From contig NC_135808.1 in assembly GCF_964213995.1 (NCBI RefSeq), positions 32,426,001 to 32,490,000 on the forward strand: 64,000 nt of DNA, in the 5' to 3' direction. The position numbers and the translations under genes are program-made. Positions within the stretch are counted from its first letter, which is position 1; every line of letters begins with the position of its first letter. Below the pieces are notes generated by a model. It was not told the origin of the DNA, made no database searches, and saw only the letters and a program-made list of their open reading frames with translations. This document shows positions 1-62,938 of the stretch, one piece after another. This DNA comes from Mustelus asterias. Lineage: Eukaryota.

Positions 1-60
1 GGAATCTTCCTGTGCCATCAGTAGCAGGAAGCTGAGCGGTGAGGTTACTAAATTAGATAG

Positions 61-817
61 GGTCAGTGCTGGGGGTCTGAGTTCAGTGTCCCAGGGGTCA
101 GTGCTGGGGGATTGAGTTCAGTGTCCCAGGGGTCAGTGCTGGGAGATGGATTGAGTTCAGTGTCCCAGGGGTCAGTGCTGGGAGATGGATTGAGTTCAGT
201 GTCCCAGGGGTCAGTGCTGGGAGATGGATTGAGTTCAGTGTCCCAGGGGTCAGTGCTGGGAAATGGATTGAGTTCAGTGTCCCAGGGGTCAGTGCTGGGG
301 GACTGAGTTCCGTGTCCCAGGGGTCAGTGCTGGGGGTCTAAGTTCCGTGTCCCAAGGGTCAGTGCTGGGGGACTGAGTTCAGTGTCCCAGGAGTCAGTGC
401 TGGGGGACTGAGTTCAGTGTCCCAGGGGTCAGTGCTGGGAGATGGATTGAGTTCAGTGTCCCGGGGTCAGTGCTGAGGGATTGAGTTCAGTGTCCCAGGG
501 GTCAGTGCTGGGGGATTGAGTTCAGTGTCCCAGGGGTCAGTGCTGGGGGACTGAGTTCAGTGTCCCAGGGGTCAGTGCTGGGGGACTGAGTTCAGTGTCC
601 CAGGGGTCAGTGCTGGGGGATTGAGTTCAGTGTCCCAGGGGTCAGTGCTGGGGGACTGAGTTCAGTGTCCCAGGGGTCAGTGCTGAGGGATCGAGTTCAG
701 TGTCCCAGGGGTCAGTGCTGGGAGATGGATTGAGTTCAGTGTCCCAGGGGTCAGTGCTGGGGGATGGATTGAGTTCAGTGTCCCAGAGGTCAGTGCTGGG
801 AGATGGATTGAGTTCAG
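61..817. repeat. Minisatellite, 31-35 bp unit (GGGGTCAGTGCTGGGGGA[TGGA]TTGAGTTCAGTGTCCCA), ~23 copies, in intron 2 of gene A
   Basis: Visible tandem units; the same unit occurs reverse-complemented at 49680-50745. Confidence 0.95.
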
Positions 818-863
818 TGTAAGGTTGTACATTGACACGCTGTTTCTCTCTGCCTGATCTTAC

Positions 864-1124
864 CGGATGTCTGGTTTGTGATCTTCAGCACTGTATTCAG
901 ATTCTCCTTCACCATGTCTGAGTGCGAGATCACCAGTTCTGTGATATAGTCCCAGAATTCAGAGTCGATATTTTCAGCCATGAACCTCTGTCTGCGAATG
1001 CAGCGACGGATATTACTGTCACAATATCCTGTTTGGATACCATCGACCACTGCAGTGCTTGTAACCGCAGGAAAATCTTCCATCCCAGAGACAACAGTGT
1101 ACATCACCGTGTGTGTGTTAGTGT
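864..1124 (-). CDS. MHC class I-like gene A, alpha1 exon (87 codons, phase 1/1)
   Basis: TTTCTTTTTACAG acceptor and GTAAGA donor; translates DTNTHTVMYTVVSGMEDFPAVTSTAVVDGIQTGYCDSNIRRCIRRQRFMAENIDSEFWD...KITNQTS(G), with class I hallmarks YxDS, RQ, FW and the NQT sequon; 261 nt like the alpha1 exons of B and C. Confidence 0.92.
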
Positions 1125-10889: not shown

Positions 10890-10941
10890 CGGGAGAGACC
10901 CAGGAAAAACACAGGGAGATGGAGAAAAGGATCAGCAACAT
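10890..10941 (-). CDS. MHC class I-like gene A, leader exon (MLLILFSISLCFSWVSP, phase 1)
   Basis: ATG at 10941, hydrophobic signal peptide, G|GTAAGT donor; identical to the leaders of B and C. Confidence 0.9.
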
Positions 10942-11140: not shown

Positions 11141-11204
11141 CCAATTAAAGAGATAAACAGCCAGCCTGTCACTAGTTACCAGGAAGATCAAACTCGTTCA
11201 GGTT
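11141..11204 (-). promoter_or_regulatory. SXY promoter module of gene A
   Basis: Sense strand AACCT-16 bp-CCTGGTAAC-TAGTGACA-21 bp-ATTGG; second CCAAT downstream; IRF-like AAAGTGAAAC at 11245-11254. Confidence 0.8.
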
Positions 11205-11384
11205 CAGGCTGAAAAAAATCTAATCTTTACCCAGCACCTTGCACAAAGTGAAACCTCCCCAAGGACAGCTTTATAAAACAAAGATTGACCCAGAGACACA
11301 CACAGCTCAATGCACAAAAACTGTCTCCAAATTCCAGGGTTGAAGGAGTGTTTTAAAGACAGGCTGCAGAGGGGTGTAGGGAGG

Positions 11385-30700: not shown

Positions 30701-30922
30701 ATGTGAGTGTGTGCGGTGGCTTTAATGATCAATATTACACCTGGTCTGGGCTGATCACACAAAGGAAGATCAGACAGGCAACAAGATGTGTTTATACGTG
30801 TGTATCTGTGTGTGGGAATTAAATCCGTTCATTCAACACAGTGTCCTGTACTCCCAGTACTGGAGATTCCCCACACTCACTCTGTCCCCTCTGTTCTACA
30901 TTCCCCTCTCTCTGATTCTTAC

Positions 30923-31033
30923 CTCTCCGTTGTCTTTTCCAGATGATTATTCCGAATATAACAGCCAGTGCTGGGATCACTGATCCGATTATAATTCCAA
31001 GATGGGAGCGTCCCCAACTGTTTTCCGGGATTT
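30923..31033 (-). CDS. Gene B connecting peptide/transmembrane exon (EIPENSWGRSHLGIIIGSVIPALAVIFGIIIWKRQRR)
   Basis: TGTGTTTCAG acceptor, GTAAGA donor, 111 nt, ~21-residue hydrophobic stretch followed by a basic stop-transfer sequence. Confidence 0.88.
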
Positions 31034-31776
31034 CTGAAACACAATTGAATAATATGAGGATTGTCTCTGTTCCCAGATCCATTCCCAGTTCTCTGTTCAT
31101 TGGGGACAATTGGAACTGAAGCTGCCCATTGGGAATTGATGGGATTGGCTGAAATGCTGGTTTTACCCTCGCCTCCATTTCACTCTCCAGTGAAGTGACG
31201 AAAGATTCCCATTGATGGTGGTGTCAAAGCCGTGTTATCCCAATCCCATAGGATACCTTCCTGGCCAGTTCAGTTCTAATTCTCCCCAATGTCTGTGTGT
31301 CCTGTCCTTGTTCAATCCCCAGGGTTACATTGTACGGCCCAGGAGGCAGCATCACTGATGTTTTCACATCAAACTTCAAAGGGATGAGGAATAAACTGAT
31401 CGCTGGAAACTGGGCTGAGCTGAGAATGAGGAAATCCACAGATAAACAGAGCAAATGCTTCAAAAGAAGCACTTGGTCCAATCCAGCAGCAGGACTTTGT
31501 CCTAAACAACTGCACTGACCCCACCATGGTCAACACATGGAATAAGTGAGAGAATCCAACTCAAAGAAAAGACTTCACAAAATGTCCAGAGATTGAGTTC
31601 CAGACACTGAGACAAGTATCAGCTGGTCAAAGAGAGACAGGATGGATTGTGAAGGGAATCTCATGTCTGCCTCATCTCAGTGAGTGTGATGAGGAGCACA
31701 ATAACATGGTGGAGAAGGGAGTGTCTATGGACCTGCAGGGAACACGCACACACAGTACAGTTCGACAGTTCCTTAC

Positions 31777-32415
31777 CCGACTGATGGAGCTTGGGCTCTG
31801 CCAGGCTGCTGTGTTCAATTCGACAGGAGTATTGATCCTCATCCCCAGCATTTATTTCAATCTCTTTCTGGATCTGATGGGTCCCATCGTGGTTCGGTCG
31901 AACCCCCGAGGATAGTGTCTCAGACATTACCTCTCCATTCCTTAGCCAGTTCACCTCGATGTCTACAGGATAAAAGCCAGTAACCAGGCAGGAGAGAGTG
32001 AGCGACTTGTACTGACTATTGGGTTCACTATTGGGCGGCATGGTAGCACAGTGCTTAGCACTGCTGCTTCACAGCTCCAGGGTCCTGGGTTCGATTCCCG
32101 GCTCGGGTCACTGTCTGTGTGGAGTTTGCACATTCTCCTCGTGTCTGCGTGGGTTTCCTCCGGGTGCTCCGGTTTCCTCCCACAGCCCAAAGATGTGCGG
32201 GTTAGGTTGATTGGCCAGGTTAAGAAAAAAATTGCCCCTTAGAGTCCTGGGATGTGTAGGTTAGAGGGATTAGCGGGTAAATATGTGGGGGTAGGGCCTG
32301 GGTGGGATTGTGGTCGGTGCGGACTCGATGGGCCGAATGGCCTCCTTCTGCACTGTAGGGTTTCTATGACTTCTATGACTTCTATGACTTCTGGAGATGA
32401 AGACTTCAGGCTGAA
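31777..32415 (-). CDS. Gene B alpha3 (Ig C1) exon, 279 nt plus 360-nt SINE insertion
   Basis: LSCLVTGFYP, VNW, PNHDGTHQ, YSCRIEHSSL; 275/279 nt identical to gene C alpha3 once 32030-32389 is removed. Confidence 0.95.
32030..32389 (+). mobile_element. tRNA-derived SINE inserted antisense into the gene B alpha3 exon
   Basis: Full SINE from GGGCGGCA to the (TTCTATGAC)n tail; gene C shows the empty site. Confidence 0.95.
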
Positions 32416-32532: not shown

Positions 32533-32808
32533 CTTTCCTTTTAAGACATTCCTTTCCAAAGTGTAAACGTAGTTTTAAACGTTCAATCAATTCTACTTCC
32601 AACTGCCATTTCCAAAACTTGTTCCAGGATTCGTCCGAATCCCATTTCTCCATGGTTTTCACTGCCATGTGATTGGATGCGACCCATCTCATTCTGTCTG
32701 GCTCTAAACTAATATAGTCCTTTCCATCAAATCCAAACCGCATCGACCTCTTAATGGAGCCGTCTTCAGTGGCCTCAACAGACCGAATCAATTGAAGAAC
32801 GTGAATTC
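32533..32808 (-). CDS. Gene B alpha2 exon (92 codons)
   Basis: CTGACAG acceptor, GTGTTG donor; GIHVLQ...FGFDGKDYISL...W...TMEKW; no Cys101 or Cys164. Confidence 0.93.
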
Positions 32809-39734: not shown

Positions 39735-39995
39735 CGGATGTCTGGTTTGTGTTCTTCAGGATCGTATTCAGATTCTTCATTGCAATGTCGGATCGTGCGT
39801 TCCCAATATCTGTGAGCATATTCCAGAATTCCTCCTTGAAATGTTCTTCCATGAACTTTTGCCTGGGGATCATCTGACGGATATCACTGTCATAATAATC
39901 TATTTCCACTCCATTGATCATTGCAACACCACTAACAACAGGAAAGTCTTTAATACCAGAGATTGCTGTGTATATCACAGTAAATGAGCTGGTAT
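39735..39995 (-). CDS. Gene B alpha1 exon (87 codons)
   Basis: TTTCTTTTACAG acceptor, GTAAGA donor; DTSSFTVIYTAISGIKDFP...YYDSDIRQMIPRQKF...FWN...NQTS(G). Confidence 0.94.
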
Positions 39996-40536
39996 CTGTA
40001 AAAGAAACAATTAAATTCACAGGTTAATAGACCTTTCCACACATTCCCAGCTGATCACAGTGAGAGCCATCCACACTGTGACAAACTCTAATAATCCTCC
40101 ACTTTATCCCAATGTCAGAATCCTCTCTAATATTAGAAACAGGGGGATGGACAATCCAGAGCAGGATCTCCACTGTCCTTCACAGAGCTTTTTAATCATC
40201 CCTTTATACACGCTCACATGGATGTTGGTGGTCTGAGATAACCCGGAATATTCAATCAAGAGAGAATCACAGCTGATCCTGGGGTGGGTGAAACACGGAT
40301 TATCCTTCTCCTCTCCATAGCGTTTCGAAGACTTTAGACCAGGAGTGATGAAGCTGTTTTGCTTCTCCCAATCAATACGAAAATTAAAATTGTCCATTTG
40401 AAGCATTTTCCATTTGCTCCAAGCTTCTCTGCTCTGGGTGTTTGTACATCCTGCTGTCAGGAGAGCTGAACACCAATCCCATCAGAGTCTTCCACACTGT
40501 GCTGACTTCAATGGTGTCAAATATCAGGTTGGCTGT

Positions 40537-40832
40537 TGACGCGCGATAAATCACACGGGAGGCTGGATGTACCCGGGAAATAAAGGCTTTTATTGCCAAC
40601 AATAACGGAGCTACTATATACAATATACAATCCCAGACTAAAGGGTCACCAGGCAGAGCAGTGACCTTTATACCTCTCCCAGAAGGCGGAGCCAACTGGC
40701 GTGTACCATAGGACTATATTAACAGGTAGAACAGCCCAACCCTAACCCCAACAGTAACATATCTACAGACTCATAGTACTGGCCAGACCATGGCTCAGCA
40801 CTCCTGGTGGTAACCAACAATGGTTCAGCACA
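40537..40832 (-). mobile_element. Solo LTR (296 bp) related to the Gypsy LTRs at 11385 and 15801, in gene B intron 1
   Basis: Reverse complement aligns to the Gypsy LTR (GAGAGGTATAAAGGTC, AATAAAAGCCTTTATTTCC); 5-bp TSD GCTGT; empty site in gene C near 45645. Confidence 0.92.
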
Positions 40833-40942
40833 GCTGTATAACAGCGTCTGAGCAAACATCACCCATTTCAAACTCTCACCAAAAGATTCAAATTCACCCC
40901 AGAGAGAGAGAGTGAGAATGGAAGAGTGAATTCTGTACTTAC

Positions 40943-40994
40943 CGGGAGAGACCCAGGAAAAACACAGGGAGATGGAGAAAAGGATCAGCAACAT
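40943..40994 (-). CDS. Gene B leader exon
   Basis: ATG 40994, MLLILFSISLCFSWVSP, G|GTAAGT. Confidence 0.92.
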
Positions 40995-41193
40995 TCTGGG
41001 AATCCACTGTCCCAATTCCAATCAGTGACTGGGAATTAAACACTCTGAGGAGGAAACAACTTTATAAACTGAGGGGAAACTTGAAAAAAACAAAAATTTT
41101 ATCCAGACTCCATTTTCCTGTCTCAGTCGAACTTTGCTCATTTCCTTATTGCAGAAGCAGAGGATGACTGAATGGTTAGTCTCAGAAAATTAA

Positions 41194-41257
41194 CCAATTT
41201 AAGAGATAAACAGTTAACCTGTCACTCGTTACCAGGAAGATCAAACTCAGACAGGTT
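41194..41257 (-). promoter_or_regulatory. SXY promoter module of gene B
   Basis: AACCT-16 bp-CCTGGTAAC-GAGTGACA-21 bp-ATTGG; IRF-like AAAGTGAAAC at 41302-41311. Confidence 0.8.
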
Positions 41258-42099
41258 CCGATTCAGGCTGAAAAATCTAATCTTTCTCCAGCGCCTTTCA
41301 CAAAGTGAAACCTCCCCAAGGGCAGCTTTATAAAACAAAGATTGACCCAGAGACACACACAGCTCAGTGCACAAAAACTGCTCAAAGTTCTAAAGTGTTT
41401 TAGAGAGAGGCTGCAGAGGGGTGTAGGGAGGGGATTACAGAGTGAAGGACCGAGGTTACTAAAGGCACAGTCCCCAGTGGGGCGATTCTAATCCCTGATA
41501 CTGGAGATTTCCGAATGAGAGGAACACAGAGATCTCACAGAGTTTGTGAAACTGGAGGAGATTACAGAAATAGGAAGGGGCGAGGACATGGAGAGATTTC
41601 AATTTTAAAATTCTCAAGATCCACTGCAGCAACTCACCAAGGTTGCTGTTCCATTGAGTGTTCGAGATATAGATTCTTTGGGGCTTGTCTATCTCCCAAC
41701 GTAACCTGCATGAGACTGAAGTTTGTTCAAACATTCCTCTGTATTTACAGCTTCAATATGTGTCTGAGGATCTCTGTATGAGGCTAAAACTCTTCCCCGC
41801 TCCAGAGCCACAGCAATGTGGTTGGCTTTTAACTGTCCTTGGGCAATAAATGCTGGCCAGCCAGCGGTGCCCAGGTCCCACGAATGAATAAAGAAAACAG
41901 ATTAAAGATGTGCAGGTTAGGTGGATTTGCCATGCTATATTGCTCCTTAGTGTCCCAAGACGTGCAGGTTAGGGGGATTAGTGGGGTTAGGGGATAGGGC
42001 AGCGTCTGGGCCTGAGTAAGATGCTCTGTTGGTACATACTCAATGGGCCAAATGGTCTCCTACTGCACTGATAGGGATTCTATCATGCTATGAAAATCC

Positions 42100-43170
42100 A
42101 GGGCAGAGAGAATGCTAGCCTTTATTTCAAAGGGAATGGAATATAAAAATAGGGAAAGCTTGCTAAAACTATACAAGGCACGAGTTAGACCACTCCTGGA
42201 ATACTGAGAACAGTTTTGGTCCCCTTATCTAAGGAAAGATATACTGGCCTTGGAGGCAGTCCAGAGAAGGTTCACTCGGTTGAACCCGGGTGTTGAGGGA
42301 TTTTCTTATGAGGAGAGGTTGAGTAGGTTAGGCCTGTACTCATTGGAGTTTAGAAGAATGAGAGGCGACCTTTTTGAGACATATTTGACAGAGTAGATCT
42401 GAGAGGTTGTTTCCCCTTGTGGGACAGTCTAGGACCAGAGGGCAGAATCTCAGAGTAAGATGTCACCCATTTAAGACAGAGATGAGGAGGAATTTCTTCT
42501 CTCAGTGTGTAGTGTCTCTCTGCAATTCTTTACCAGAGAGGGCTGTAGAGACTGGATCATTCAGTATGTTCAAGGCTGAGAAAGACAGATTGTTAATGAG
42601 TTAGTGAACGAAGGGTTATGGGGGTAAGGTGGATAAGTGGAGCTGAGGATTATCACATCAGGATCAGTCATGATCTCATTGAATGGTGGAGCTGACTTGA
42701 TGGGCTGAATGGCCTACATCTGCTCCTATATCTTCTGGTCTTATGAGTCGTTTGACTGGGAACTTACAGGTCAGTGAGCACAGGGGTACCTGAGGAACAC
42801 CGAGCCCAGTGAGAGGGTTCATGGACTGGGTTGTAAGAGCCTGAGGGGTATTGACAGGGTGGATGTGGAGAGGATGTTTCCTCTTGTCGGCGAATCTAGA
42901 ACTCGGGGTCAGAGTTTAAAATAAGGGGTCTCCTGTTTAAGACAGAGATGAGGAGAAATGTTTTCTCTCAGAGAGTCACGAGGCTCCGGATCTCTCTTCC
43001 TCCAAAGGCAGTGGAAGCTTTGAATATTTTTAAGGCAGAGTTAGATAGATTCTTGATCAACAAGCGGGTGAAAGGTTATCGGGGAACAGGCAAGAATGTG
43101 GGGTTGAAGTTACAATCACACCAGCCATGATCTTATTGAATAGGGGAACAGGCTCGAGGGGCCGAGTGGC
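42100..43170 (+). mobile_element. CR1 3' fragments (paralogous to 16320-17250)
   Basis: Collinear, highly similar sequence. Confidence 0.88.
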
Positions 43171-43539
43171 CTAATCCCTTTGCTGGTATGTGGTATAACT
43201 CCAGTCTGAGCACAGCCAGTTTAACAGTTCCCGGGGGGACTGGATCAGTGTCAATGTGTTCACTGTGAGGGGAGAGTCCAGGATCCCGGTGTCTCCTCTC
43301 TTTACACTGGAGCAGCTGGACGAGGCCTCTTCAATCTCACTGTAATGATGGCATTGAATCGACTGAAAGGGGAATCTCCAACCTGTTGGGCGCTCCTGCC
43401 AGTTCCATGGTGGAGCCATGATGGAACTAAGGTCACATCAGACACTTAACTGGCCATCGTCGAACTGGAATTCTCCCCCCCACCCACCTCGCCCCGGGAG
43501 GTGTCGGGAGTGGTGACAGCTGCTCACAATGTATTCATC

Positions 43540-44400
43540 ATAAGACCATAAGAAATAGGAACAGGAGGAGGCCATTCAGCTCTTCGAGCCTGTTCGGCAA
43601 TTTAATAAGATCATGGATGGTCTAACACTCATTGAGTCCAATTTCCTCTCTTCTCTCCGTAATCCTTAATTTCCAAACTGATTAAAAACCTATCAATCTC
43701 AGACTTGAATATGTTGAAGGACTCGACCTCCACAGCTTCCTGGTGTAAAGAATTCCAAAGATTCACCACTCTTTGACGGATTAAATTCTTCCCCAAATCC
43801 GTGTTAAGTGATCACCCCCTTATTCTGCGACTCTGTCCTCTGATCCTACACTCTCCCATGAGTGGAAACATCCTCCCAACATTTACCCTGTCGAACCCCC
43901 GAAGACTCTTATATGTTTCAATCATGTCACCGCTCATTCCTCTGAACTCCAAGGAGTACAGACCCAACCTGTTTAATCTTCCCTCATATGGCAGTCCCTC
44001 TGTACCCGGCATCATCCCAGTAAACCTCCTCTGTACTGCCTCCAATGACAATATATTTCCTTAAATAATGGACCAAATCTGTACACAGTATCATAACTGT
44101 GGCCTCACTGGTACCTTGTACAGTTGCAGCAACACCCCTTCACTTTTATACTCCAGCCTCCTTGAAATAACAGCGAGCATTCCATTTACCATCCCTATTA
44201 CCCTCTGTACCTGTATTGATGGCTTTCGGGTTTCATGAACAAGGCCCCCCCCGAGTCCCTTTGTGCTGCAGCTTTCTGCAGTCTTTCCATTTAAATAATA
44301 ATCTGCCTTCTCATTCCTTCATTCAAAATGAACAAGCTCACATTTTTCCACATTGAATTCCATTTGCCAATTTGCTGCCCATTCACTAACCTGTCAATAT
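43540..44400 (-). mobile_element. CR1 3' fragment
   Basis: LEAVQRRFTGMMPG...; CR1 3' tail. Confidence 0.85.
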
Positions 44401-44559
44401 ATTTGAACCATAGAATGTCCACAGTGCAGAAGGAGGCCATTCAGCCCATTTGAGACTGCACCAACAACAATTCTATGCCATTTTATATGTCCACTGATCG
44501 GCAGGGGAGTATGCAAGGGGGGCTTATCTGCGGGGGCGGGAGAGAGGGGGCAGAGATAG

Positions 44560-45170
44560 GCACAGGGAGTCCAATACAAACTGAAAGAACAGCATCTAAT
44601 CTTTGAATTTAAGCATCTAATTAGGAATTGTACAGCGTTCTGGACTGAACATTGAGTTCAACAACTTCAGAGCATGAATTCTTCCTTCCACCTTCGCCCC
44701 ATTTCCATTTATTTTATTTCTTTTTCTTGTTCATCCATTTTTATTACTTTATATTATTATCGTCATTTTTATTTTTAATTCCTTCCATTGTTTCATTTCT
44801 CCACTTCTAAAATCTCACTTTCCATTTTGTTTCCCCCTCCCCCCACCCCATGAGGACCCTCTGCCACATGCCTCAGGTTGTTTGACATTCTGTACCTCTG
44901 TTCTACTGTTTACACATTATGATCTCTTAATGGACGCTATTCGCTCCATTCCTGGCCTTTATCACCACCATTTGCATTCCCTTTGTCTTTTTGCCTTTTC
45001 CATCCCTATCCATTATAGCCCCCTCCACCCCACCCTTACAGTATGAATCTCGTCCTATTTTCTTTGCCTTCAGCTCTGACGAAGAGTCATCCAGACTCGA
45101 AACATTGGCTCTTTTCTCTCTCCACAGATCTGTCAGACCTGCTGAGATTTTCCAGCATTTTCTGTTGTGT
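44560..45170 (+). mobile_element. Penelope-like element 3' fragment abutting the gene C promoter
   Basis: KLKEQHLIF...GLNIEFNNFRA* (GIY-YIG C-terminus); hammerhead-like core at 45076-45102. Confidence 0.75.
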
Positions 45171-45178
45171 TGAATAAC

Positions 45179-45240
45179 AACCTGTCTGAGTTTAATCTGC
45201 CTGGTAACTGCTGACATTACATTCTTTATCCTGTTATTGG
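45179..45240 (+). promoter_or_regulatory. SXY promoter module of gene C
   Basis: AACCT(45179)-16 bp-CCTGGTAAC(45200)-TGCTGACA-19 bp-ATTGG(45236); second CCAAT at 45259. Confidence 0.8.
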
Positions 45241-45488
45241 CTATTTTTCTGAGGCTAACCAATCAGAGCTTGTCCAGGAAGTTTAAGTTCAGGAAATGAT
45301 CAAACTGGAAATAAACAACAATAAAAGAGGGAAATGCGATGACTGGTCTGAACTGTTTCTGTCCTTCTGAATCTACTTGGACTTCTTGTTTATTGTGTGT
45401 TTTCCAATCACAATAAACAGTGTTAGATTCCTCCTCAGAGTGTTTAATTCGCAGTCACTGATTGGAATTGGGACAGTGGATTCCCAGA

Positions 45489-45540
45489 ATGTTGCTGATC
45501 CTTTTCTCCATCTCCCTGTGTTTTTCCTGGGTCTCTCCCG
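45489..45540 (+). CDS. MHC class I-like gene C leader exon
   Basis: ATG 45489, MLLILFSISLCFSWVSP, G|GTAAGT. Confidence 0.92.
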
Positions 45541-45812
45541 GTAAGTACAGAATTCACTCTTCCATTCTCACTCTCTCTCTCTGGGGTGAATTTGAATCTT
45601 TTGGTGAGAGTTTGAAATGGGTGATGTTTGCTCAGACGCTGTTATACAGCCAGCCTGATATTTGACACCATTGAAGTCAGCACAGTGTGGAAGACTCTGA
45701 TGGGATTGGTGTTCAGCTCTCCTGACAGCAGGATGTACAAACACCCAGAGCAGAGAAGCTTGGAGCAAATGGAAAATGCTTCAAATGGACAATTTTAATT
45801 TTCACTTCGATT

Positions 45813-46080
45813 GGCGGCACGGTGGCACAGTGGTTAGCACTGCTGCCTCACAGCGCCAGGGACCCGGGTTTGATTCCTGGCTTGGGTCACTGTGTGGAGT
45901 TTGCACGTTCTTGTGTCTGTGTGGGTTTCCTCTGGGTGCTCCAGTTTCTTCCCACAGTCTGAAAGACATGCTGTTTAGGTGCATTGACCTGAACAGGTGC
46001 CAGAGTGTAGCGACTACGGGAATTTCACAGTAACTTCATTGTAGTGTTAATGTAAGCCTTACATGTGACTAATACATTTT
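45813..46080 (+). mobile_element. tRNA-derived SINE in gene C intron 1
   Basis: A and B boxes plus core; absent at the homologous site in B (~40375). Confidence 0.9.
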
Positions 46081-46788
46081 TTATTAATTTTAAAAATTGG
46101 GAGAAGCAAAACAGTTTCATCACCCCTGGTCTAAAGTCTTCGAAACACTGCGGAGAGGAGAAGGATAATCCATGTTTCACCCACCCCGGGATCAGCTGTG
46201 ATGCCCTCATGGTTGAATAGGTCAGGTTATCTTTGAATAGGTCAGGTTATCTCAGACCACCAACATCCTAGTGAGTATGAGTAAAGCTCTGTGAAGGACA
46301 GTGGAGATCCTGCTCTGGATTATCCATCCCCCTGTTTGATGGTGAGACTGTTCGTATCGTGACTGTCTCCCCCTCCCCCCTCCCCCCCCCCTCCCCCCCC
46401 CCCCCCCCCCCCCCCACCCCCCCATCCCATGGTGCGGGGTTCTGCTCACAACCAACAGTGAAACTAAAACTGGATCACGAGACACTCTTCCCTTCCAGTG
46501 ATTTAAGGCTGCTGCAATTTAAAAACAGATTACTGAAAAGATGATAAACAGCAGACCAGTCCGGAGTGACTCTGATTCCGTGTTTACTCCCTGCTCTGAG
46601 ACTCTGCAGCACCTAATTCTCACCCAGTTTAATGTGATTCTGTTTCTAATATCAGACAGGATTCTGACATTGGGATAAAGTGGGGGATTATTGGAGTTTG
46701 TCACTGTGTGGATGGCTCTCACTGTGACCCCAGGGGGTAGTGTGTGGAAATGTCTATTAACCTGCCACTGTAATTGGTTATTTTCCAG

Positions 46789-47049
46789 CTACTGATTCAA
46801 TAATTGCAGTATACACCGCGGTCTCCGGAATGACAGATTTCCCCGAGGTGACTAAAGTTGCGACGGTCAATGGAATTCAGGTGAATTATCACGACAGTAA
46901 CATTCGACAGACCATCCCCAGACAGCAGTTCCTGATGGAATCTTTCAAACAGGCCTATTGGGATGATCTGTCTAGTATTGGAAACAGACATTCGACCGTC
47001 ACAAAGGATTATCTGTTTACAGTCATGAAGAGCATGAACCAGACATCAG
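46789..47049 (+). CDS. Gene C alpha1 exon (87 codons)
   Basis: TTATTTTCCAG acceptor, GTAAGA donor; ATDSIIAVYTAVSGMTDFPEV...YHDSNIRQTIPRQQF...YWD...NQTS(G). Confidence 0.94.
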
Positions 47050-49679: not shown

Positions 49680-50745
49680 ACACTCAGTCCACTCTAGCAC
49701 TGAACCCTGGGATACTGAACACAGTCCATCCCAGCACTGAACCCAGGGATCTGGACTCAGTTCCCCAACACAGATCCCTGGGACACTGAACTCCATCCCC
49801 CAGCACTGACCCCCTGGGACACTGAACTCCATCCCCCAGCACTGACCCCTGGTACACTGAACTCCATCCCCCAGCACTGACCCCCTGGGACACTGAACTC
49901 AGTCCCCCAGCACTGACCCCTGGGACACTGAACTCAGTCCCCCAGCACAGACCCCTGGGACACTGAACTCCATCCCCCAGCACTGACCCCCTGGGACACT
50001 GAACTCAGTCCCCCAGCACTGACCCCTGGGACACTGAACTCAGTCCCCCAGCACAGACCCCTGGGACACTGAACTCCATCCCCCAGCACTGCCCCCTGGG
50101 ACACTGAACTCAGACCATCTCCCAGCACTGACCCCCTGGGAAACTGAACTCAGTCCCCCAGCACTGACCCCTGGGACACTGAACTCAGTCCCCCAGCACT
50201 GACCCCTGGGACACTGAACTCAGTCCATCTCCCAGCACTGACCCCCTGGGAAACTGAACTCAGTCCCCCAGCACTGACCCCTGGGACACTGAACTCAGTC
50301 CCCCAGCACTGACCCCTGGGACACTGAACTCAGACCCCCATCACTGACCCCCTGGGACACTGAACTCCATCCCCCAGCACTGCCCCCTGGGACACTGAAC
50401 TCAGTCCCCCAGCACTGACCCCTGGGACACTGAACTCCATCCCCCAGCACTGACCCCTGGGACACTGAACTCAGTCCCCCAGCACTGACCCCTGGGACAC
50501 TGAACTCCATCCCCCAGCACTGACCCCTGGTACACTGAACTCAGTCCCCCAGCACTGACCCCTGGGACACTGAACTCAGACCCCCAGCACTGACCCCTGG
50601 GACACTGAACTCAGTCCCCCAGCACTGACCCCCTGGGACACTGAACTCCATCCCCCAGCTCTGACCCCTGGGACACTGAACTCCGTCACCCAGCACTGAC
50701 CCCTGGGACACTGAACTCAGACCCCCAGCACTGACACCTGGGACA
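49680..50745. repeat. Minisatellite, 31-36 bp unit (CTGGGACACTGAACTCAGTCCCCCAGCACTGACCC), ~30 copies, gene C intron 2
   Basis: Reverse complement of the 61-817 array. Confidence 0.95.
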
Positions 50746-51114
50746 CATAATCACTCATTTCTATCTGATACTAGATCCCTTTCCCTCTGGTAACATTGTG
50801 ACACTAATCCCCATTTCTGATACTAGATCCCCGATCCCCTCTGATCACACTGGGACTCTAATCCCCATTTCTATCTGATGGTAGATCACTGATCCCCTCT
50901 GATCACACTGCGACTCTAATCCCCATTTCTATCTGATACTAGATCACTGATCCCCTCTGATCACACTGCGACTCTAATCCCCATTTCTATCTGATACTAG
51001 ATCACTGATCCCCGCTGATCACACTGCGACTCTAATCCCCATTTCTATCTGATACTAGATCACTGATCCCCGCTGATCACACTGCGACTCTAATCCCCAT
51101 TTCAAAGAGCTTCG

Positions 51115-54470: not shown

Positions 54471-54747
54471 GCTTTCTGATACTAGATCCCCAATCCTCTC
54501 TAATCACACTGCGACTCAAATCCCCATCTCAATCTGATACTGGATCCCTGATCCCCTCTGATCACACTGTGACTCAGATCCCCATTTCTACCTGATACTA
54601 GATATCCGATCCCCTCTGATCACACTGTGACTCTAATCCCCATTTCAATCTGATACTAGATCTCCGATCCTCTCTGATCACACTGACTCTAATCCCCATT
54701 TCTATCTGATACCAGATCCCTGATCCCCTCTGATCACACTGTGACTG

Positions 54748-56569: not shown

Positions 56570-57687
56570 GACTCTAATCTCCATTTCAATCTGATACTAG
56601 ATCCCCGATCCCCTCTGATGACACCATGACTCTAATCCCCATATCTATCTGAGACCAGATCCCTTTATCCTCTGATCATACTGTGACTCTAACCCCCATT
56701 TCTATCTGATACTAGATCCCTGATCCCCTCTGATCACACAGTGACTATAATCCCATTTATATCTGATACTAGATCCCTGATCTGCTCTGATCACACTGCG
56801 ACTCTAATCCCCATTTCTATCTGATACGAGATCCCTTTCCCCTCGAATCACACTGTGACTTGAATCCCCATTTCTATTTTACACCAGATGCCCCATGAAC
56901 ACACTGTGACTCTAATCCCCATTTATATCTAATACCAGATCCCTGTTCCCCTCTGATCACACTGTGACTCTATTCCCCATCTCAATCTGATACTAGATCC
57001 CTGATCCCCTCTGATCACACTGCGACTCAAATCCCCATTTCTATCTGATACTATATCTCTGATGCCCTCTGATCACACTGTGACTCTAATCCCCATTTCA
57101 ACCTGATACTAGATCCCTGATCCCCTCTGATTACACTGCGACTCAAATGTCCATTTCTGATACTAGATCTCCAAATTACTCTGATCACAGTGACTCTAAT
57201 CCCCATTTCTATACTAAATCACTGATCCCCTCTAATTACATTGCGACTCTAATCCCCATTTATATCTGATACTAGATCCCTGATCCCCTCTGATCACACT
57301 GTGACTCTCACCCCCATTTCTGTCTGATACTAGATCTCTGATCCCCTCTGATCATACTGTGACTTAAATCCCCATTCTATTTGATACCAGATCCCTGATC
57401 CCCTCTGATCACACTGTGACTCTAATCCCCATTTCTACCTGATTCTAGATCCCCATCCCCTCAGATCATATTGCGACTCAAATCCCCATTTCTGATACAA
57501 GATCCCTGATCCCCCCTGATCACACTGTGACTCTAATCCCCATTTCTGATACTAGATCCCTGATCCCCTCTGATCACACTGTGACTCTAATCCCCATTTC
57601 TATCTGATACTAGATCCCTTTTCGCTCTGATCTGATTGTTAGTGATTTTCCATTAATGATAGATCATTAATTATCAATCTCTGACAG

Positions 57688-57963
57688 GAATTCACACTTT
57701 CCAGTTGATTATGATTGTTGAGGTCACTGAAGACGGCTCCATTAAGAGATCGATGCGGTTTGGATTTGATGGAAAGGACTATATTAGTTTAGAGCCAGAC
57801 AGAATGAGATGGGTCGCAACCAATCACTTCGCAGTGAAGACTAAAGAGAAATGGGATCTGAATGAATCCTGGAACAAGCACTGGAAAAGGACTTTGGAAG
57901 TACATTGTGTGCAGTATTTGAAAAGATATTTACAAGCTGGAAAGGAACATTTTGAACGGAAAG
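57688..57963 (+). CDS. Gene C alpha2 exon (92 codons)
   Basis: CTCTGACAG acceptor, GTATCT donor; GIHTFQLIMIVE...FGFDGKDYISL...TKEKW...LEVHCVQYLKRYLQAGKE. Confidence 0.94.
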
Positions 57964-58329
57964 GTATCTCATTGAGTCTCATTTTTGATCTGACTTTAGT
58001 GATGTATGTCTGAATTACTGAGACATCCCCAGCCTGAGCCCAGTCCCAAATGTACCTAAATGTAGTGTGATCACAGAGGTTGGGGAATCTGGGGTTGTCA
58101 CACCATGAGTGAGATATCACTGCACATGGAAATGGCTGCTTGTGACAGAGGAAATTGTATGTATCTGTTTGTTGCCCACAGCAATGTTCAGACATTGGGG
58201 AGAGGGACCTTTGGGACTGAGCTGGGTCTGTGCTCAGTGAATACTCTCATCATTCTTCACAATGGGAAAGGACAATGTGAGCGTAGATATCAGGACAGAG
58301 CACTGTGGAATATTAGAGAGAGGACGTCT

Positions 58330-59860
58330 TGGTACGTTTAGCAGCCTTTAAAGTGGATAAACCCGCAGACCCAGCTGAGATTTGTCGCAGGCTGTTGAAG
58401 GGGGAATGGTGCAGATATCAGGGGCACTGCCACTAATTTTCAAATCCTCTCTGGACAGAGGTGAGGTGCCAGAGGACTGGAGGAAAACTAACATTGTCCC
58501 ATTATCAAAAAAAAAGGGAGATAGGGATAGACCAGGAAATTTCAGTCAGCCTAACCTCGGTGGTGGAGAAGTTACTGGAAAGAATTGTGGGGGATAGAAT
58601 ATATCTGCACTTGAATAGACACAGAATGATCAGCGAGAGTCAGCATGGACTTGTTAAGGGAAGGTTGTGTTTGACAAATTTAATCAGCTTTTCTGAGGAG
58701 GTAACCAGGAGTCTTGATGAGGGCAATACGTTTGTTGTGGTCTATATGGTCTTTATCGAGGCTTTTGATAAGATCCCTCATGACAGATAGATCAAGAAAG
58801 TAAGGGCCCATGGATTCCAACGCAGAGTGGCGCATTGGATCCAAACATTGGATCCAACATTGACTGAGATGCAGGAAGCAGAAGGTGAGGGATGTTTCTG
58901 TGACTGGAAGTCCGTTTCCAGTGGAGTCCCACAGGGCTGCGGGTGGGGCACTTGCTATTTCTGGCATACATGAATGACTTGGTCTTAAATATAGTGGGTT
59001 TGAACAAGAAGTTTGTGAATGACAGGAAAATCGTTAGGATGGTAAATAGCAAATAGGAGGATAGATGTAGACTGCAGGAGGGTAGCAATAGACTGGTCAG
59101 GTGGACAGAACAGCGGCAAATGGAATTCAACCTGGGAAAGTGTGAGATGGGGAGGGTTAACAAGGAAAAGGCATACCATGAATGGTAAGGTCCTGGAAAG
59201 TACTGAGGATCAGAGAGACCTTGGAATGCAGATCCACAAATCCCCGAAGGTAGCAGGACAGATAGATCTGGTGGTTAAGAAGGCAAATGGGATACTTGCC
59301 TTTATTGGCTGAGACACAGAATACAAGAGTAGAGAGGTCATGCTGGACCTTTAGAAAACACTGTTAGGCCACAACCAGAAAAGTGTGTGTAGCTCTGGCC
59401 ACCATATTATAGGAAGGGTTTGATTACACTGGGGAGGGTGCAGAGATGCTGCCTGGGCTGGAGGGTCTCCGCTATGAGGAAAGATTGGATAGGCTGGGAC
59501 TGTTTTCCTTGGAGCAGTGAAGAGGGGACCTGATAGAAGTGTTTAGGATGATGAGGGACATAGGGTGGAAAGGGATGACTTTTTCCATCAGTGGAGGGGT
59601 CAATAACCAGGGACATAGAAGTAGAAGTCTAAGAGGGGAGTTGAGGAGAAACCTTTTCACTCAGAGGTTGTGGGAGTGTGGAACTCACTGCCTACAGTCA
59701 GATATTCACCAAACATTTCAGAAGTATTTAGATATTCACTTGCTCTGCCGTAACCTCCAGGGCTATTGGACAAGTGCTGGAAAATGGAATTAGTGCAGTC
59801 AGATCTTTGTGGACCCACATGAACATGATGGGCTGAATGGCCCCTCTGTGCTGTAAAAGT
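58330..59860 (+). mobile_element. Old degraded CR1 ORF2
   Basis: VPEDWR, SQHG, AFDKIPH remnants. Confidence 0.8.
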
Positions 59861-59873
59861 CTATGGATCTAAT

Positions 59874-60225
59874 GGGCGGCACGGTAGCACAGTGGTTAGC
59901 ACTGCTGCTTCACAGCTCCAGGGTCCCGGGTTCGATTCCCGGCTCGGGTCACTGTCTGTGTGGAGTTTGCACATTCTCCTTGTGTCTGTGTGGGTTTCCT
60001 CCGGGTGCTCCGGTTTCCTCCCACAGTCCAAAGATGTGCGGGTTAGGTTGATTGGCCAGGTTAAAAAATTGCCCCTTAGAGTCAAGGGATGTGTAGGTTA
60101 GAGGGATTAGTGGGTAAAATATGTGGGGGTAGGGCCAGGGTGGGATTGTGGTCGGTGCAGACTCGATGGGCCGAATGGCCTCCTTCTGCACTGTAGGGTT
60201 TCTATGATTCTATTTCTATGATTCT
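59874..60225 (+). mobile_element. tRNA-derived SINE
   Basis: Nearly identical to the SINE in gene B alpha3. Confidence 0.93.
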
Positions 60226-60476
60226 ATAACTGCTTTAGGGCAGGTTTAAAGAGGCAGCACAAGGTTTAGAGAAAGTCCCTGCCCCCAGCAGTGTAGTTGA
60301 ATGTAACAGCAGATTCTGGTGGTGAAGGGACTGTGTCTCTGAGCTTTTTAGATAATTTATTGACTTTCTTGAGCTGTTTCTAAAACTAATTCAGAGAGCA
60401 GGGGGATCTTCAATTTGTAGTCATGACCATCTCCCTGTTAGCTCCACGAGATCCCTGTCTAGATTCCCAATTGGGT

Positions 60477-62450
60477 GCTGAGACCCCCTTCACACAGCCA
60501 ATTGGCACAGTTCCTGCAGAGACCCCCTTCACACTGCCAATTGGCACAGTTCCTGCAGAGACCCCCTTCACACTGCCAATTGGCACAGTTCCTGCAGAGA
60601 CCCCCTTCACACAGCCAATTGGCACAGTTCCTGCAGAGACCCCACTTCACACAGCCAATTGGCACAGTTCCTGCAGAGACCCCCTTCACACTGCCAATTG
60701 GCACAGTTCCTGCACAGACCCCCTTCACACTGCCAATTGGCACAGTTCCTGCACAGACCCCCTTCACACTGCCAACTGGCACAGTTCCTGCAGAGACCCC
60801 CTTCGCACTGCCAATTGGCACAGTTCCTGCACAGACCCCCTTCACACTGCCAACTGGCACAGTTCCTGCAGAGACCCCCTTCGCACTGCCAATTGGCACA
60901 GTTCCTGCAGAGACCCCCTTCACACTGCCAATTGGCACAGTTCCTGCACAGACCCCCTTCACACTGCCAATTGGCACAGTTCCTGCACAGACCCCCTTCA
61001 CACTGCCAACTGGCACAGTTCCTGCAGAGACCCCCTTCGCACTGCCAATTGGCACAGTTCCTGCAGAGACCCCCTTCACACTGCCAATTGGCACAGTTCC
61101 TGCAGAGACCCCCTTCACACTGCCAATTGGCACAGTTCCTGCAGAGACCCTTCACACTGCCAACTGGCACAGTTCCTGCAGAGACCCCCTTCGCACTGCC
61201 AATTGGCACAGTTCCTGCAAAGACCCCCTTCACACTGCCAATTGGCACAGTTCCTGCACAGACCCCCTTCACACTGCCAATTGGCACAGTTCCTGAAGAG
61301 ACCCTTCACACTGCCAATTGGCACAGTTCCTGAAGAGACCCTTCACACTGCCAATTGGCACAGTTCCTGCACAGACCCCCTTCGCACTGCCAATTGGCAC
61401 AGTTCCTGCAGAGACCCCCTTTCACACTGCCAATTGGCACAGTTCCTGCACAGACCCCCTTCACACTGCCAACTGGCACAGTTCCTGCAGAGACCCCCTT
61501 CGCACTGCCAATTGGCACAGTTCCTGCACAGACCCCCTTCACACTGCCAATTGGCACAGTTCCTGAAGAGACCCTTCACACTGCCAATTGGCACAGTTCC
61601 TGCACAGACCCCCTTCGCACTGCCAATTGGCACAGTTCCTGCAGAGACCCCCTTTCACACTGCCAATTGGCACAGTTCCTGCACAGACCCCCTTCACACT
61701 GCCAACTGGCACAGTTCCTGCAGAGACCCCCTTCGCACTGCCAATTGGCACAGTTCCTGCACAGACCCCCTTCACACTGCCAATTGGCACAGTTCCTGAA
61801 GAGACCCTTCACACTGCCAATTGGCACAGTTCCTGCAGAGACCCTTCACATTGTCAATTGGCACAGCTCCTGCAGAGACGCTTTACACTGCCAATTGGCG
61901 CAGTTCCTGCAGAGACCCCCTTCACACTGCCAACTGGCGCAGTTCCTGCAGAGACCCCCTTCACACTGCCAATTGGCGCAGTTCCTGCAGAGACCATTTT
62001 CACACTGCCAATTGGCGCAGTTCCTGCAGAGACCATTTTCACACTGCCAATTGGCACAGTTCCTGCAGAGACCCCCTTCACACTGCCAACTGGCGCAGTT
62101 CCTGCAGAGACCCCCTTCACACTGCCAATTGGCGCAGTTCCTGCAGAGACCATTTTCACACTGCCAATTGGCACAGTTCCTGCAGAGACCCCTTTCACAC
62201 TGAGAATTAGCATGATTCCTGCAGAGACCCCATTCACACGGCCAATTGGCACAGTTCCTACAGAGACCCTTCACACTGCCAATTGGCACAGTTCCTGCGG
62301 AGACCCCATTCACACGGCCAATTGGCACAGTTCCTACAGAGACCCTTCACACTGCCAATTGGCACAGTTCCTGCAGAGACCCTTCACACTGCCAATTGGC
62401 ACAGTTCCTACAGAGACCCCATTCACACTGCCAATTGGCACAGTTCCTGC
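60477..62450. repeat. 39-bp minisatellite (CTGCAGAGACCCCCTTCACACTGCCAATTGGCACAGTTC), ~50 copies, gene C intron 3
   Basis: Visible tandem units; 13-residue periodic ORFs on both strands. Confidence 0.96.
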
Positions 62451-62626
62451 GAGGCAGACACAAACTGGCGGTCTTGATGATTGAATGGTGGATCTGAAGT
62501 AGCATGCGAACTGAGCGGACCTCTCTGTTTCTGCCCTGCCTGCCTCCAAATACAGCTCATTGAACCGTTCTCCCATTCCATTCAGTGTGGGTTTATTGTT
62601 TGTGTTTTCACCCTTTCCCATTACAG

Positions 62627-62905
62627 TTCAGCCTGACGTCTTCATCTCCAGAAGTGAACCCAATAGTCAGTACAAGTCGCTCACTCTCTCCTGCCTGGTT
62701 ACTGGCTTTTATCCTGCAGACATCGAGGTGACCTGGCTAAGGAATGGAGAGGTAATGTCTGAGACACTATCCTCGGGGGTTCGACCGAACCACGATGGGA
62801 CCCATCAGATCCAGAAAGAGATTGAAATAAATGCTGGGGATGAGGATCAATACTCCTGTCAAATTGAACACAGCAGCCTGGCAGAGCCCAAGCTCCATCA
62901 GTCGG
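62627..62905 (+). CDS. Gene C alpha3 (Ig C1) exon (93 codons)
   Basis: CCCTTTCCCATTACAG acceptor, GTAAGG donor; C-x-TGFYP, W, PNHDGT, YSC-x-IEHSSL. Confidence 0.96.
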
Positions 62906-62938
62906 GTAAGGAACTGTACTGGATTCGTCTTCGCTGCT

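What the first reader, a model, noticed from the sequence alone, without database searches (positions are those of the whole stretch)
39735..47049. Mosaic genes: ancient alpha1 exons on recently homogenised leader and alpha3 backbones
B versus C by manual count: leader 52/52 nt, alpha3 275/279 nt, alpha2 67/92 aa, alpha1 only 42/87 aa (A versus B also 42/87). In the first 48 alpha1 codons, 14 of 26 conserved residues use different synonymous codons, versus 6 of 67 in alpha2. The intron just upstream of alpha1 is still roughly 85-90% identical. So alpha1 exons are old lineages in young frames. This resembles alpha1 shuffling in teleost classical class I, but here among nonclassical paralogues: a possible combinatorial groove-diversification system.
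Basis: partly seen in the sequence, partly recalled or inferred. Interest (0 to 1): 0.8.

Follow-up and report, generated by a model that had tools for sequence, protein, structure and literature searches.

The report
Mosaic shark nonclassical MHC class I genes
Neighbouring nonclassical MHC class I genes of a shark keep very old, very different groove-forming exons, while short stretches around the signal peptide and the membrane-proximal domain are kept nearly identical by copying between genes, a pattern already known from other vertebrate MHC families.

Summary

**The genes.** Genes B (minus strand) and C (plus strand) lie head to head. They belong to a large shark-only nonclassical class I family. 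Database models 100% identical to their exons are labelled Mustelus asterias.

**B versus C is a patchwork**:
- 5'UTR, leader and 5' intron 1: 372/374 nt.
- 3' intron 1: 323/363.
- Alpha1: 167/261, dS 1.1-1.5.
- Alpha2: a 102/105 core between parts at about 70%.
- 3' intron 3, alpha3 and the start of intron 4: 348/354, dS about 0.

The 5' tract ends at a SINE. The alpha3 tract starts at a 4.5 kb insertion.

**Family-wide pattern.** In 74 alpha1-alpha2-alpha3 units from 13 shark species, alpha3 follows taxonomy and alpha1 and alpha2 follow trans-species lineages.

**Verdict.** This is segmental concerted evolution by short-tract gene conversion, plus occasional domain exchange. Gene B carries the alpha2 of one lineage and the alpha1 of another. 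A dedicated combinatorial system is not supported, because alpha1 and alpha2 mostly travel together.

The pattern is a new member of a kind known from teleost class I. The scan noted it before in the overlapping window (s1-891559) and 9.4 Mb away (s1-893725, s1-893810). Reads and further paralogue DNA could not be obtained.

The parts
864..1124 (-). Gene A alpha1 exon. Alpha2 and later exons lie off the window.
   Evidence: Splice sites and open frame. Pfam MHC_I E 2.9e-4. 91% aa to a Mustelus asterias model, P0196.
10890..10941 (-). Gene A leader exon (52 nt, phase 1)
   Evidence: Exact match of the 52-nt leader. The flanks are 96/97 identical to B and C.
39735..39995 (-). Gene B alpha1 exon
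   Evidence: 100% identical to model P0170. Sister to a Stegostoma alpha1, SH-aLRT 96.
40943..40994 (-). Gene B leader exon
40379..41053 (-). B side of the 5' near-identical tract (5'UTR, leader, 5' intron 1). It is interrupted by a 296-bp solo LTR at 40537-40832.
   Evidence: MAFFT alignment, 372/374 with the LTR left out. LTR identified.
32533..32808 (-). Gene B alpha2 exon. The near-identical core is at 32672-32776.
   Evidence: 93% aa to the alpha2 of Mustelus model P0156, whose alpha1 is only 50% like B's.
31777..32415 (-). Gene B alpha3 exon in two pieces (32387-32415 and 31777-32026), split by a 360-bp antisense tRNA-type SINE (32027-32386)
   Evidence: Reading through the SINE meets a stop.
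30921..31037 (-). Gene B transmembrane exon (approximate limits)
   Evidence: tblastn with P0170, 97% identity
45430..45803 (+). C side of the 5' near-identical tract: 59 nt of 5'UTR, the leader (45489-45540) and 263 nt of intron 1
   Evidence: 372/374 against B. The promoter just upstream is 141/210.
45815..46073 (+). SINE insertion in C intron 1. It marks the 3' end of the near-identical tract.
   Evidence: Local BLAST before the reads call. Identity falls from 99.5% to about 89% across it.
46789..47049 (+). Gene C alpha1 exon
   Evidence: 100% identical to the first unit of fused model P0152. The next best alpha1 is only 57%.
57688..57963 (+). Gene C alpha2 exon. The near-identical core is at 57720-57824.
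62563..62917 (+). C side of the alpha3 tract: last 64 nt of intron 3, the alpha3 exon (62627-62905) and 12 nt of intron 4
   Evidence: 348/354 against B. It is flanked by 30/44 (5' intron 3) and 20/66 (intron 4).
58008..62562 (+). 4.5 kb present in C's intron 3 and absent from B's 117-nt intron. It holds transposable elements and a 39-bp x 51 minisatellite (60476-62450). Its end is the 5' limit of the alpha3 tract.
49682..50746 (+). 35-bp x 30 minisatellite in C intron 2. The same unit lies 44 nt downstream of A's alpha1 (60-820).

Best explanation
The window holds three members (A, B, C) of a large multigene family of nonclassical MHC class I genes found across sharks. It is probably the lineage named UEA; that name is recalled and inferred, not tested.

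The genes evolve as mosaics. The exons that build the ligand groove belong to old lineages that predate the splits between shark orders. This holds for all of alpha1, and for the first strand and the helix of alpha2. They are not overwritten.

Short stretches elsewhere are repeatedly copied between paralogues of one genome by interlocus gene conversion, so they track the species and not the gene lineage. These stretches are the 5'UTR, leader and start of intron 1, a core of alpha2, and the end of intron 3 with alpha3.

Between B and C the tracts are 105 to about 375 nt long. Two of their limits coincide with insertions, as expected if copying stops where homology stops. Because B and C are inverted, unequal crossing-over cannot give this pattern.

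Now and then a whole domain exon is exchanged. Gene B has the alpha2 of a conserved lineage and the alpha1 of another.

Shown: the patchwork, the synonymous-site contrast, the tree conflict and the tract limits.

Inferred: conversion as the process. Also inferred is selection as the reason. On that reading alpha3 and the leader serve shared partners such as beta2-microglobulin, and alpha1 and alpha2 define distinct ligands.
For: **Identity of the genes.** Pfam MHC_I and C1-set match on the exons.

**B versus C by segment**:
- Promoter 141/210.
- 5' tract 372/374.
- 3' intron 1 323/363.
- Alpha1 167/261.
- Alpha2 21/30, then 102/105, then 98/138.
- 5' intron 3 30/44.
- Alpha3 tract 348/354.
- Intron 4 beyond it 20/66.

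**Synonymous divergence.** dS is 1.09-1.51 in alpha1, 0.05 in the alpha2 core, 0.5-0.58 in the alpha2 flanks and about 0 in alpha3.

**Promoter mosaic.** B's promoter is like A's (91% over 595 nt), yet from -59 onward B equals C.

**Family level: 74 units from 13 species.**
- Nearest neighbour in the same species: 19/74 for alpha1, 25/74 for alpha2, 54/74 for alpha3.
- Species-label changes on ML trees: 46, 46 and 21. The minimum is 12 and shuffles give about 54.
- The alpha3 tree mirrors taxonomy.
- Alpha3 identity is 91.6% within a species for pairs with alpha1 under 60% (n=199). It is 83.0% between orders for pairs with alpha1 at or above 70% (n=57). Mann-Whitney p 7e-23.
- Mantel r: alpha1-alpha2 0.36 (p 0.001), alpha1-alpha3 0.05 (p 0.20).

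**AU tests.**
- Alpha1 rejects Mustelus monophyly (delta lnL 296, p 1e-42). Alpha3 does not (p 0.44).
- Alpha3 rejects the major alpha1 clade (delta lnL 146, p 2e-45).

**Gene B as a recombinant.**
- Its alpha2 is 93% like P0156 while its alpha1 is 50% like P0156.
- Grouping B with that lineage is favoured by alpha2 (p 0.69).
- The same grouping is rejected by alpha1 (p 0.001).
Against: - Nucleotide-level evidence rests on one gene pair, plus A for the 5' end.
- C's alpha1 has no close relative. The best is 57% and its end branch is 0.57. Its age therefore rests on dS alone, and it may also evolve fast.
- With the alpha2 core left out, alpha1 is only marginally more diverged at synonymous sites than alpha2. 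The bootstrap 95% interval of the difference is -0.014 to 0.457.
- The leader is conserved between species as protein (87.7%), and the first 200 nt of the 5' tract are near-identical in A as well. Constraint may therefore add to conversion there.
- The solo LTR inside B's tract was neither copied to C nor removed. This needs two tracts or a very young insertion.
- Family units come from automatic gene models. Some are fused or skip exons. Chimeric models could create false alpha1/alpha2 exchanges, but not the species pattern of alpha3.
- The trees are 'quick' searches on about 90 columns, and many forks are unresolved.
Confidence: 0.8

Rival explanations
1. B and C are a recent inverted duplicate. 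Alpha1 diverged fast afterwards through positive selection, relaxed constraint or a locally raised mutation rate, so nothing in it is ancient.
For: C's alpha1 sits on a long end branch (0.57), and its best relative is 57% identical. The intron right before alpha1 is still 89% identical. B may be a pseudogene.
Against: - Synonymous sites are near saturation: fourfold sites differ at 14/20, and dS is 1.1-1.5 with dN/dS about 0.3.
- The promoter (67%), the alpha2 flanks (dS 0.5-0.6) and 5' intron 3 (68%) are also old.
- B's alpha1 groups with a Stegostoma gene and A's alpha1 falls in another major clade shared by several orders.
- Alpha1 rejects a Mustelus clade.
Confidence: 0.05
2. No copying between genes is needed. 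The leader and alpha3 are alike only because purifying selection holds them.
For: Alpha3 and the leader are conserved as protein across all sharks sampled: alpha3 is 83% identical between orders and the leader 87.7% between species. All 4 alpha3 differences between B and C are replacements.
Against: - Identity runs on into introns: 263 nt of intron 1 inside the 372/374 tract, and 62/64 of intron 3.
- dS of alpha3 is 0.
- Alpha3 carries species-specific and order-specific states shared by genes of different alpha1 lineages.
Confidence: 0.05
3. Hybrid genes arise by unequal crossing-over in the long introns during birth and death of tandem copies, not by short-tract conversion.
For: The family is a large cluster with fused and partial models. 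Introns 2 and 3 are long and full of repeats. Gene B's alpha1/alpha2 switch lies in a 6.9 kb intron.
Against: B and C are head to head, so a crossover between them would invert DNA and not make hybrids. The tracts are short (105-375 nt) and have diverged sequence on both sides.
Confidence: 0.08
4. The near-identical tracts are an assembly or polishing artefact between similar paralogues.
For: No independent reads could be laid. The best DNA holders may be the source sample itself.
Against: The tracts carry a few real differences (2, 3 and 6) and sit in unique flanks with different insertions. The same domain pattern is seen in annotated models from 13 species.
Confidence: 0.02

Closest known systems
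Teleost U-lineage class I: ancient alpha1 domain lineages shuffled by recombination, with alpha3 homogenised per species (Grimholt et al. 2015, PMC4364491; passages read)
   Same: Alpha1 lineages are shared between distant species. Alpha2 shows this less strongly. Alpha3 clusters by species. Recombination occurs between the domain exons.
   Different: In teleosts the lineages segregate largely as alleles of classical, peptide-binding loci. Here they are fixed paralogues of a nonclassical family, and alpha1 and alpha2 mostly stay together. The short conversion tracts seen here, including one inside alpha2, are not described in the passages I read.
Shark nonclassical class I lineage UEA (Almeida et al. 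2021, J Immunol 207:824). The paper is not held. I know it from citing passages in PMC10751288 and PMC12562908 and from recall of its abstract.
   Same: Multicopy, confined to sharks, MHC-linked and far from classical UAA. Here identity to Triakis UAA is 33-35%. Peptide-end-binding residues are partly lost (my reading, with recalled numbering).
   Different: I could not see whether that paper already reports domain-wise trees or alpha3 homogenisation. No database name says UEA, so the assignment is an inference.
Concerted evolution of alpha3 and downstream exons among mammalian class I paralogues and Xenopus XNC/uba genes (recalled; PMC12562908 passages mention only the expanded Xenopus family)
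   Same: The membrane-proximal domain is kept alike among many paralogues of one species, while alpha1 and alpha2 differ.
   Different: The shark alpha1 and alpha2 lineages are far older: they are shared between orders, and two are shared between superorders. I did not test the mammalian or frog cases here.

Membership tests
MHC class I heavy chain | Alpha1 and alpha2 domains of the MHC_I fold followed by a C1-set Ig domain, one exon each, after a leader exon | tested here: met
   Pfam PF00129 matches the alpha1 and alpha2 exons and PF07654 matches the alpha3 exons. Exon order and phase-1 junctions are seen. The best solved relatives are class I and MR1 chains, E about 1e-48.
Classical (peptide-presenting) class I | Invariant residues that hold the peptide ends, and the alpha2 disulfide | tested here: not met
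   Read from the translations with HLA numbering recalled. The position of Tyr7 is Val or Ala. Tyr84 is Asn, Ser or Ile. The first alpha2 Cys is absent in B and C, and the second is kept only in C. Thr143, Lys146 and Trp147 are kept. No alignment to a numbered structure was made.
Shark UEA lineage | Large multigene family present in sharks, distinct from UAA and UBA, and MHC-linked | tested here: inconclusive
   About 100 models at or above 50% identity come from 13 shark species of both superorders. The next hits, at or below 39%, are other class I lineages. Linkage, the absence from rays, and the name itself were not tested. The defining paper is not held.
Segmental concerted evolution (interlocus gene conversion) | Paralogues of one genome more alike than orthologues in part of the gene, with diverged flanks on both sides and silent and intron sites included | tested here: met
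   Tracts of 372/374, 102/105 and 348/354 lie between flanks of 64-70% identity, with dS about 0-0.05 inside them. Alpha3 identity is 91.6% within species and 83.0% between orders.
Teleost-type alpha1 lineage shuffling | Trans-species alpha1 lineages recombined onto different alpha2/alpha3 backgrounds | tested here: met
   Trans-species alpha1 clades are seen. Gene B is an alpha1/alpha2 recombinant. However, only 4 of 2701 pairs show a clear exchange, and alpha2 does not reject the major alpha1 clade.
Teleost-type alpha1 lineage shuffling | The lineages segregate as alleles of one locus | not testable with these tools
Here the lineages are separate loci in one assembly.

The most novel reading that the evidence does not exclude
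The groove exons behave as cassettes. C-rich intronic minisatellites sit right beside them. In gene A, alpha1 has one 73 nt upstream and one 44 nt downstream. In gene C, an array ends 69 nt before alpha2 and another ends 113 nt before the alpha3 tract. On this reading the minisatellites act as recombination hotspots. They would let whole alpha1 or alpha2 exons move between dozens of paralogues while the chassis is kept uniform. That would be a germline, evolutionary-time way of making new alpha1 x alpha2 groove combinations in a nonclassical family.
Probability: 0.12. Interest if true: 0.7.

Novelty: new member of a known kind. Interest (0 to 1): 0.45.

Why it matters
The pattern shows that the division of labour seen in bony-fish and tetrapod class I families already operates in a shark-only nonclassical family whose ligands are unknown. 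In that division the groove exons persist as old lineages and the membrane-proximal chassis is homogenised.

In practice, whole-gene trees of these genes mislead. Orthology must be called on alpha1 and alpha2, and species history is written in alpha3.

The short tracts with mapped limits, and gene B as a proven alpha1/alpha2 recombinant, give concrete material for measuring conversion tract length and its barriers in a slowly evolving genome.

Tried and rejected
**Steps that led nowhere**
- An exon-level search of the 90%-clustered protein collection with C's alpha1 found nothing. The length window shuts out full-length proteins, so this blank says nothing.
- Three attempts to open the two Almeida papers failed because they are not held. 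I therefore cannot say whether the shark pattern is already in print. My paper searches found no text on concerted evolution or gene conversion in shark UEA. Supplements were not opened.

**Readings considered and dropped**
- A shift in composition as the cause of alpha1 codon differences: GC3 is 0.48 against 0.52.
- Sub-exon tracts inside alpha1: identity is even at 0.5-0.7, and only the last 45 nt of A versus B reach 0.91.
- Further class I exons in the window: none beyond A, B and C.

**Rows dropped**
Of 95 alpha1-bearing units, 21 lacked alpha2 or alpha3 in their model and were left out, leaving 74. Hits at or below 39% identity and the unnamed proteins were not used.

**Joined exons**
Exons were searched one by one, and full-length comparisons used database proteins as returned.

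Full report
**What is there.** The window is repeat-rich vertebrate DNA. It holds exons of three MHC class I-like genes and no others.
- Gene A (minus strand) has its leader at 10890-10941 and alpha1 at 864-1124. The rest of A lies off the window.
- Gene B (minus strand) has its leader at 40943-40994, alpha1 at 39735-39995, alpha2 at 32533-32808 and a transmembrane exon near 30921-31037. Its alpha3 is in two pieces, 32387-32415 and 31777-32026, split by a 360-bp antisense SINE.
- Gene C (plus strand) has its leader at 45489-45540, alpha1 at 46789-47049, alpha2 at 57688-57963 and alpha3 at 62627-62905.
- B and C are head to head, 4.5 kb apart.

Database proteins 100% identical to B's exons (P0170) and to C's exons (first unit of the fused model P0152) are NCBI models labelled Mustelus asterias.

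All counts hold.
- Leader: 52/52, and A is identical too.
- Alpha3: 275/279 once the SINE is left out.
- Alpha2: 66/91 whole codons.
- Alpha1: 42/86.
- First 48 alpha1 codons: 14 of 26 conserved residues use other codons. In alpha2 the figure is 6 of 66.
- 3' part of intron 1: 323/363 = 89%.
- Fourfold sites differ at 14/20 in alpha1 and 1/17 in alpha2 (Fisher 1.2e-4).
- Four estimators give dS 1.09-1.51 for alpha1, 0.11-0.31 for alpha2 and 0-0.007 for alpha3.
- GC3 is similar in the two alpha1 exons.

**The patchwork in detail (B versus C, 5' to 3').**

| Segment | Identity | Note |
|---|---|---|
| Promoter | 141/210 (67%) | |
| 5'UTR, leader, 263 nt of intron 1 | 372/374 | near-identical tract |
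| Rest of intron 1 | 323/363 | |
| Alpha1 | 167/261 | |
| Alpha2 codons 1-10 | 21/30 | |
| Alpha2 codons 11-45 | 102/105 | dS 0.05 |
| Alpha2 codons 46-91 | 98/138 | dS 0.58 |
| First 44 nt of intron 3 | 30/44 | |
| Last 64 nt of intron 3, alpha3, 12 nt of intron 4 | 348/354 | near-identical tract |
| Intron 4 beyond that | 20/66 | unalignable |

Sources. Neighbouring segments differ with Fisher p between 8e-6 and 5e-13.

- The 5' tract ends where C carries a SINE.
- The alpha3 tract begins where C's intron 3 has 4.5 kb that B's 117-nt intron lacks.
- Beyond its 3' limit at 62917 the sequences are unalignable, and a transposable-element match begins about 20 nt further on.
- Inside the 5' tract B carries a 296-bp solo LTR, related to the Gypsy element upstream of gene A.
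- B's promoter is like A's (91% over 595 nt), but from 59 nt before the start codon B equals C. A differs from both at only a few positions over the first 200 nt.

**A caution on 'alpha1 older than alpha2'.** The low alpha2 average comes largely from the 105-nt core. Without it, pS is 0.40 in alpha2 against 0.62 in alpha1. The bootstrap 95% interval of the difference is -0.014 to 0.457, and 3.2% of resamples are at or below 0.

**The family.**
- A profile of the three alpha1 exons found 351 proteins at E up to 0.001 among 1.84 billion representatives.
- The ten best shark hits are NCBI models from Scyliorhinus, Carcharodon, Chiloscyllium, Hemiscyllium, Heterodontus and Cetorhinus.
- A search with one natural full-length member (P0013) gave 124 proteins at E up to 1e-20.
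- About 100 of them, at or above 50% identity, come from 13 shark species of both superorders. Classical Triakis UAA is at 33-35%.
- I cut alpha1, alpha2 and alpha3 out of these models by BLASTP against the window's single-exon translations. This gave 95, 90 and 97 segments, and 74 units had all three.

**Domain-wise results.**
- Mean identity within and between species: alpha1 51.3 and 49.5%, alpha2 68.3 and 66.0%, alpha3 91.7 and 84.5%.
- Nearest neighbour from the same species: 19/74, 25/74 and 54/74.
- Species-label changes on ML trees: 46, 46 and 21. The least possible is 12, and 200 shuffles give about 54 with a minimum of 47-48.
- The alpha3 tree mirrors taxonomy. It groups the two squalomorphs, then Heterodontus, Rhincodon with Stegostoma, the two lamniforms, Mustelus with Scyliorhinus, and the hemiscylliids.
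- The alpha1 tree has two major clades (SH-aLRT 98). A's alpha1 is in one; B's and C's are in the other. B's is sister to a Stegostoma gene (96).
- Two alpha1 lineages include both superorders.
- C's alpha1 is an orphan on a long branch.

**Tests of conflict.**
- Alpha1 rejects a clade of the 11 Mustelus units (delta lnL 296, p-AU 1e-42). Alpha3 does not reject it (p 0.44).
- Alpha3 rejects the 33-unit major alpha1 clade (delta lnL 146, p 2e-45). Alpha2 does not (p 0.165).
- Alpha3 identity is 91.6% for same-species pairs with alpha1 under 60% (n=199). It is 83.0% for between-order pairs with alpha1 at or above 70% (n=57). Alpha2 identity follows alpha1 instead, at 76.0 against 64.8% between orders.
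- Mantel r: 0.36 for alpha1-alpha2 (p 0.001), and 0.05 and 0.04 for alpha3 against either (p 0.20).

**Gene B as a recombinant.**
- B's alpha2 is 93% identical to that of Mustelus P0156. P0156 belongs to a lineage conserved from Heterodontus to Mustelus.
- B's alpha1 is only 50% identical to P0156's.
- Holding B with that lineage is favoured by alpha2 (p 0.69) and rejected by alpha1 (delta lnL 58, p 0.001).
- Both exons lie in the window behind one leader, so this is not a chimeric gene model.
- Over all 2701 pairs only 4 show such a clear switch.

**Reading.** The best account is segmental concerted evolution. Short conversion tracts homogenise the leader region, an alpha2 core and alpha3 among paralogues. 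The groove exons persist as old lineages, and a domain exon is exchanged now and then.
- Inverted orientation rules out unequal crossing-over for B and C.
- Selection as the cause of what is spared is an inference. On that reading the shared partners of alpha3 and the leader favour uniformity, and distinct ligands favour keeping alpha1 and alpha2 apart.
- The same logic is stated for teleost U genes in passages of PMC4364491.
- The family is probably UEA, the multicopy, shark-only, ancient Ib lineage named in passages of PMC10751288 and PMC12562908. The defining paper was not available, so I cannot tell whether it already reports this pattern.

**What could not be done.**
I worked beside that stretch afterwards and masked it in scripts.
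- No listed holder of the stretch is on record as RNA, so expression of A, B and C is unknown.
- B's alpha3 is broken by the SINE. The NCBI model reads through it as if it were an intron, although none of the four equivalent in-frame cuts gives GT-AG.

**Verdict.** The phenomenon is a new example of a known mode of MHC evolution. The scan had noted it in the overlapping window and in a second cluster of the same genome.

Noticed in passing
window 60-820, 1197-2183, 49682-51103, 54475-54746, 56570-57619, 60476-62450: C-rich intronic minisatellites (units of 20, 35, 58 and 39 bp, up to 51 copies) lie within 44-113 nt of the alpha1 or alpha2 exons or the homogenised alpha3 tract in genes A and C. 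A and C share the 35-bp unit downstream of alpha1. Gene B has single units only.
   Followed up: partly
window 57720-57824 and 32672-32776: A 105-nt core of the alpha2 exon (codons 11-45) is 102/105 identical between B and C, with dS 0.05. The rest of the exon is about 70% identical. This is a sub-exon tract, or a constraint on silent sites.
   Followed up: partly
window 40537-40832: Solo LTR with a 5-bp target duplication inside B's near-identical 5' tract. It is 78-83% like the LTRs (11382-11699, 15801-16107) of the Gypsy element upstream of gene A.
   Followed up: partly
window 32027-32386: The SINE splitting B's alpha3 exon is treated as an intron by NCBI model P0170. No in-frame GT-AG pair exists at the four equivalent cut positions, and read-through meets a stop.
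   Followed up: partly
beyond window end (from fused model P0152): The gene after C has an alpha1 88% identical to A's. The order is therefore A(-) B(-) | C(+) D(+), with the outer pair alike in alpha1 and the inner pair unlike. This may be an old inverted duplication in which one inner alpha1 was replaced.
   Followed up: no
window 11141-11384, 41168-41431, 45171-45429: The promoters of A and B are 91% alike, while C's is 67% like B's and has extra insertions. The 59 nt before the start codon are shared by all three.
   Followed up: partly
window 32533-32808 and 57688-57963: Whole-exon dN/dS of alpha2 (B versus C) is 0.65 by NG86, and above 1 by ML (1.03) and LWL85 (1.8). This is because dS is pulled down by the core tract. 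It is not by itself evidence of positive selection.
   Followed up: partly
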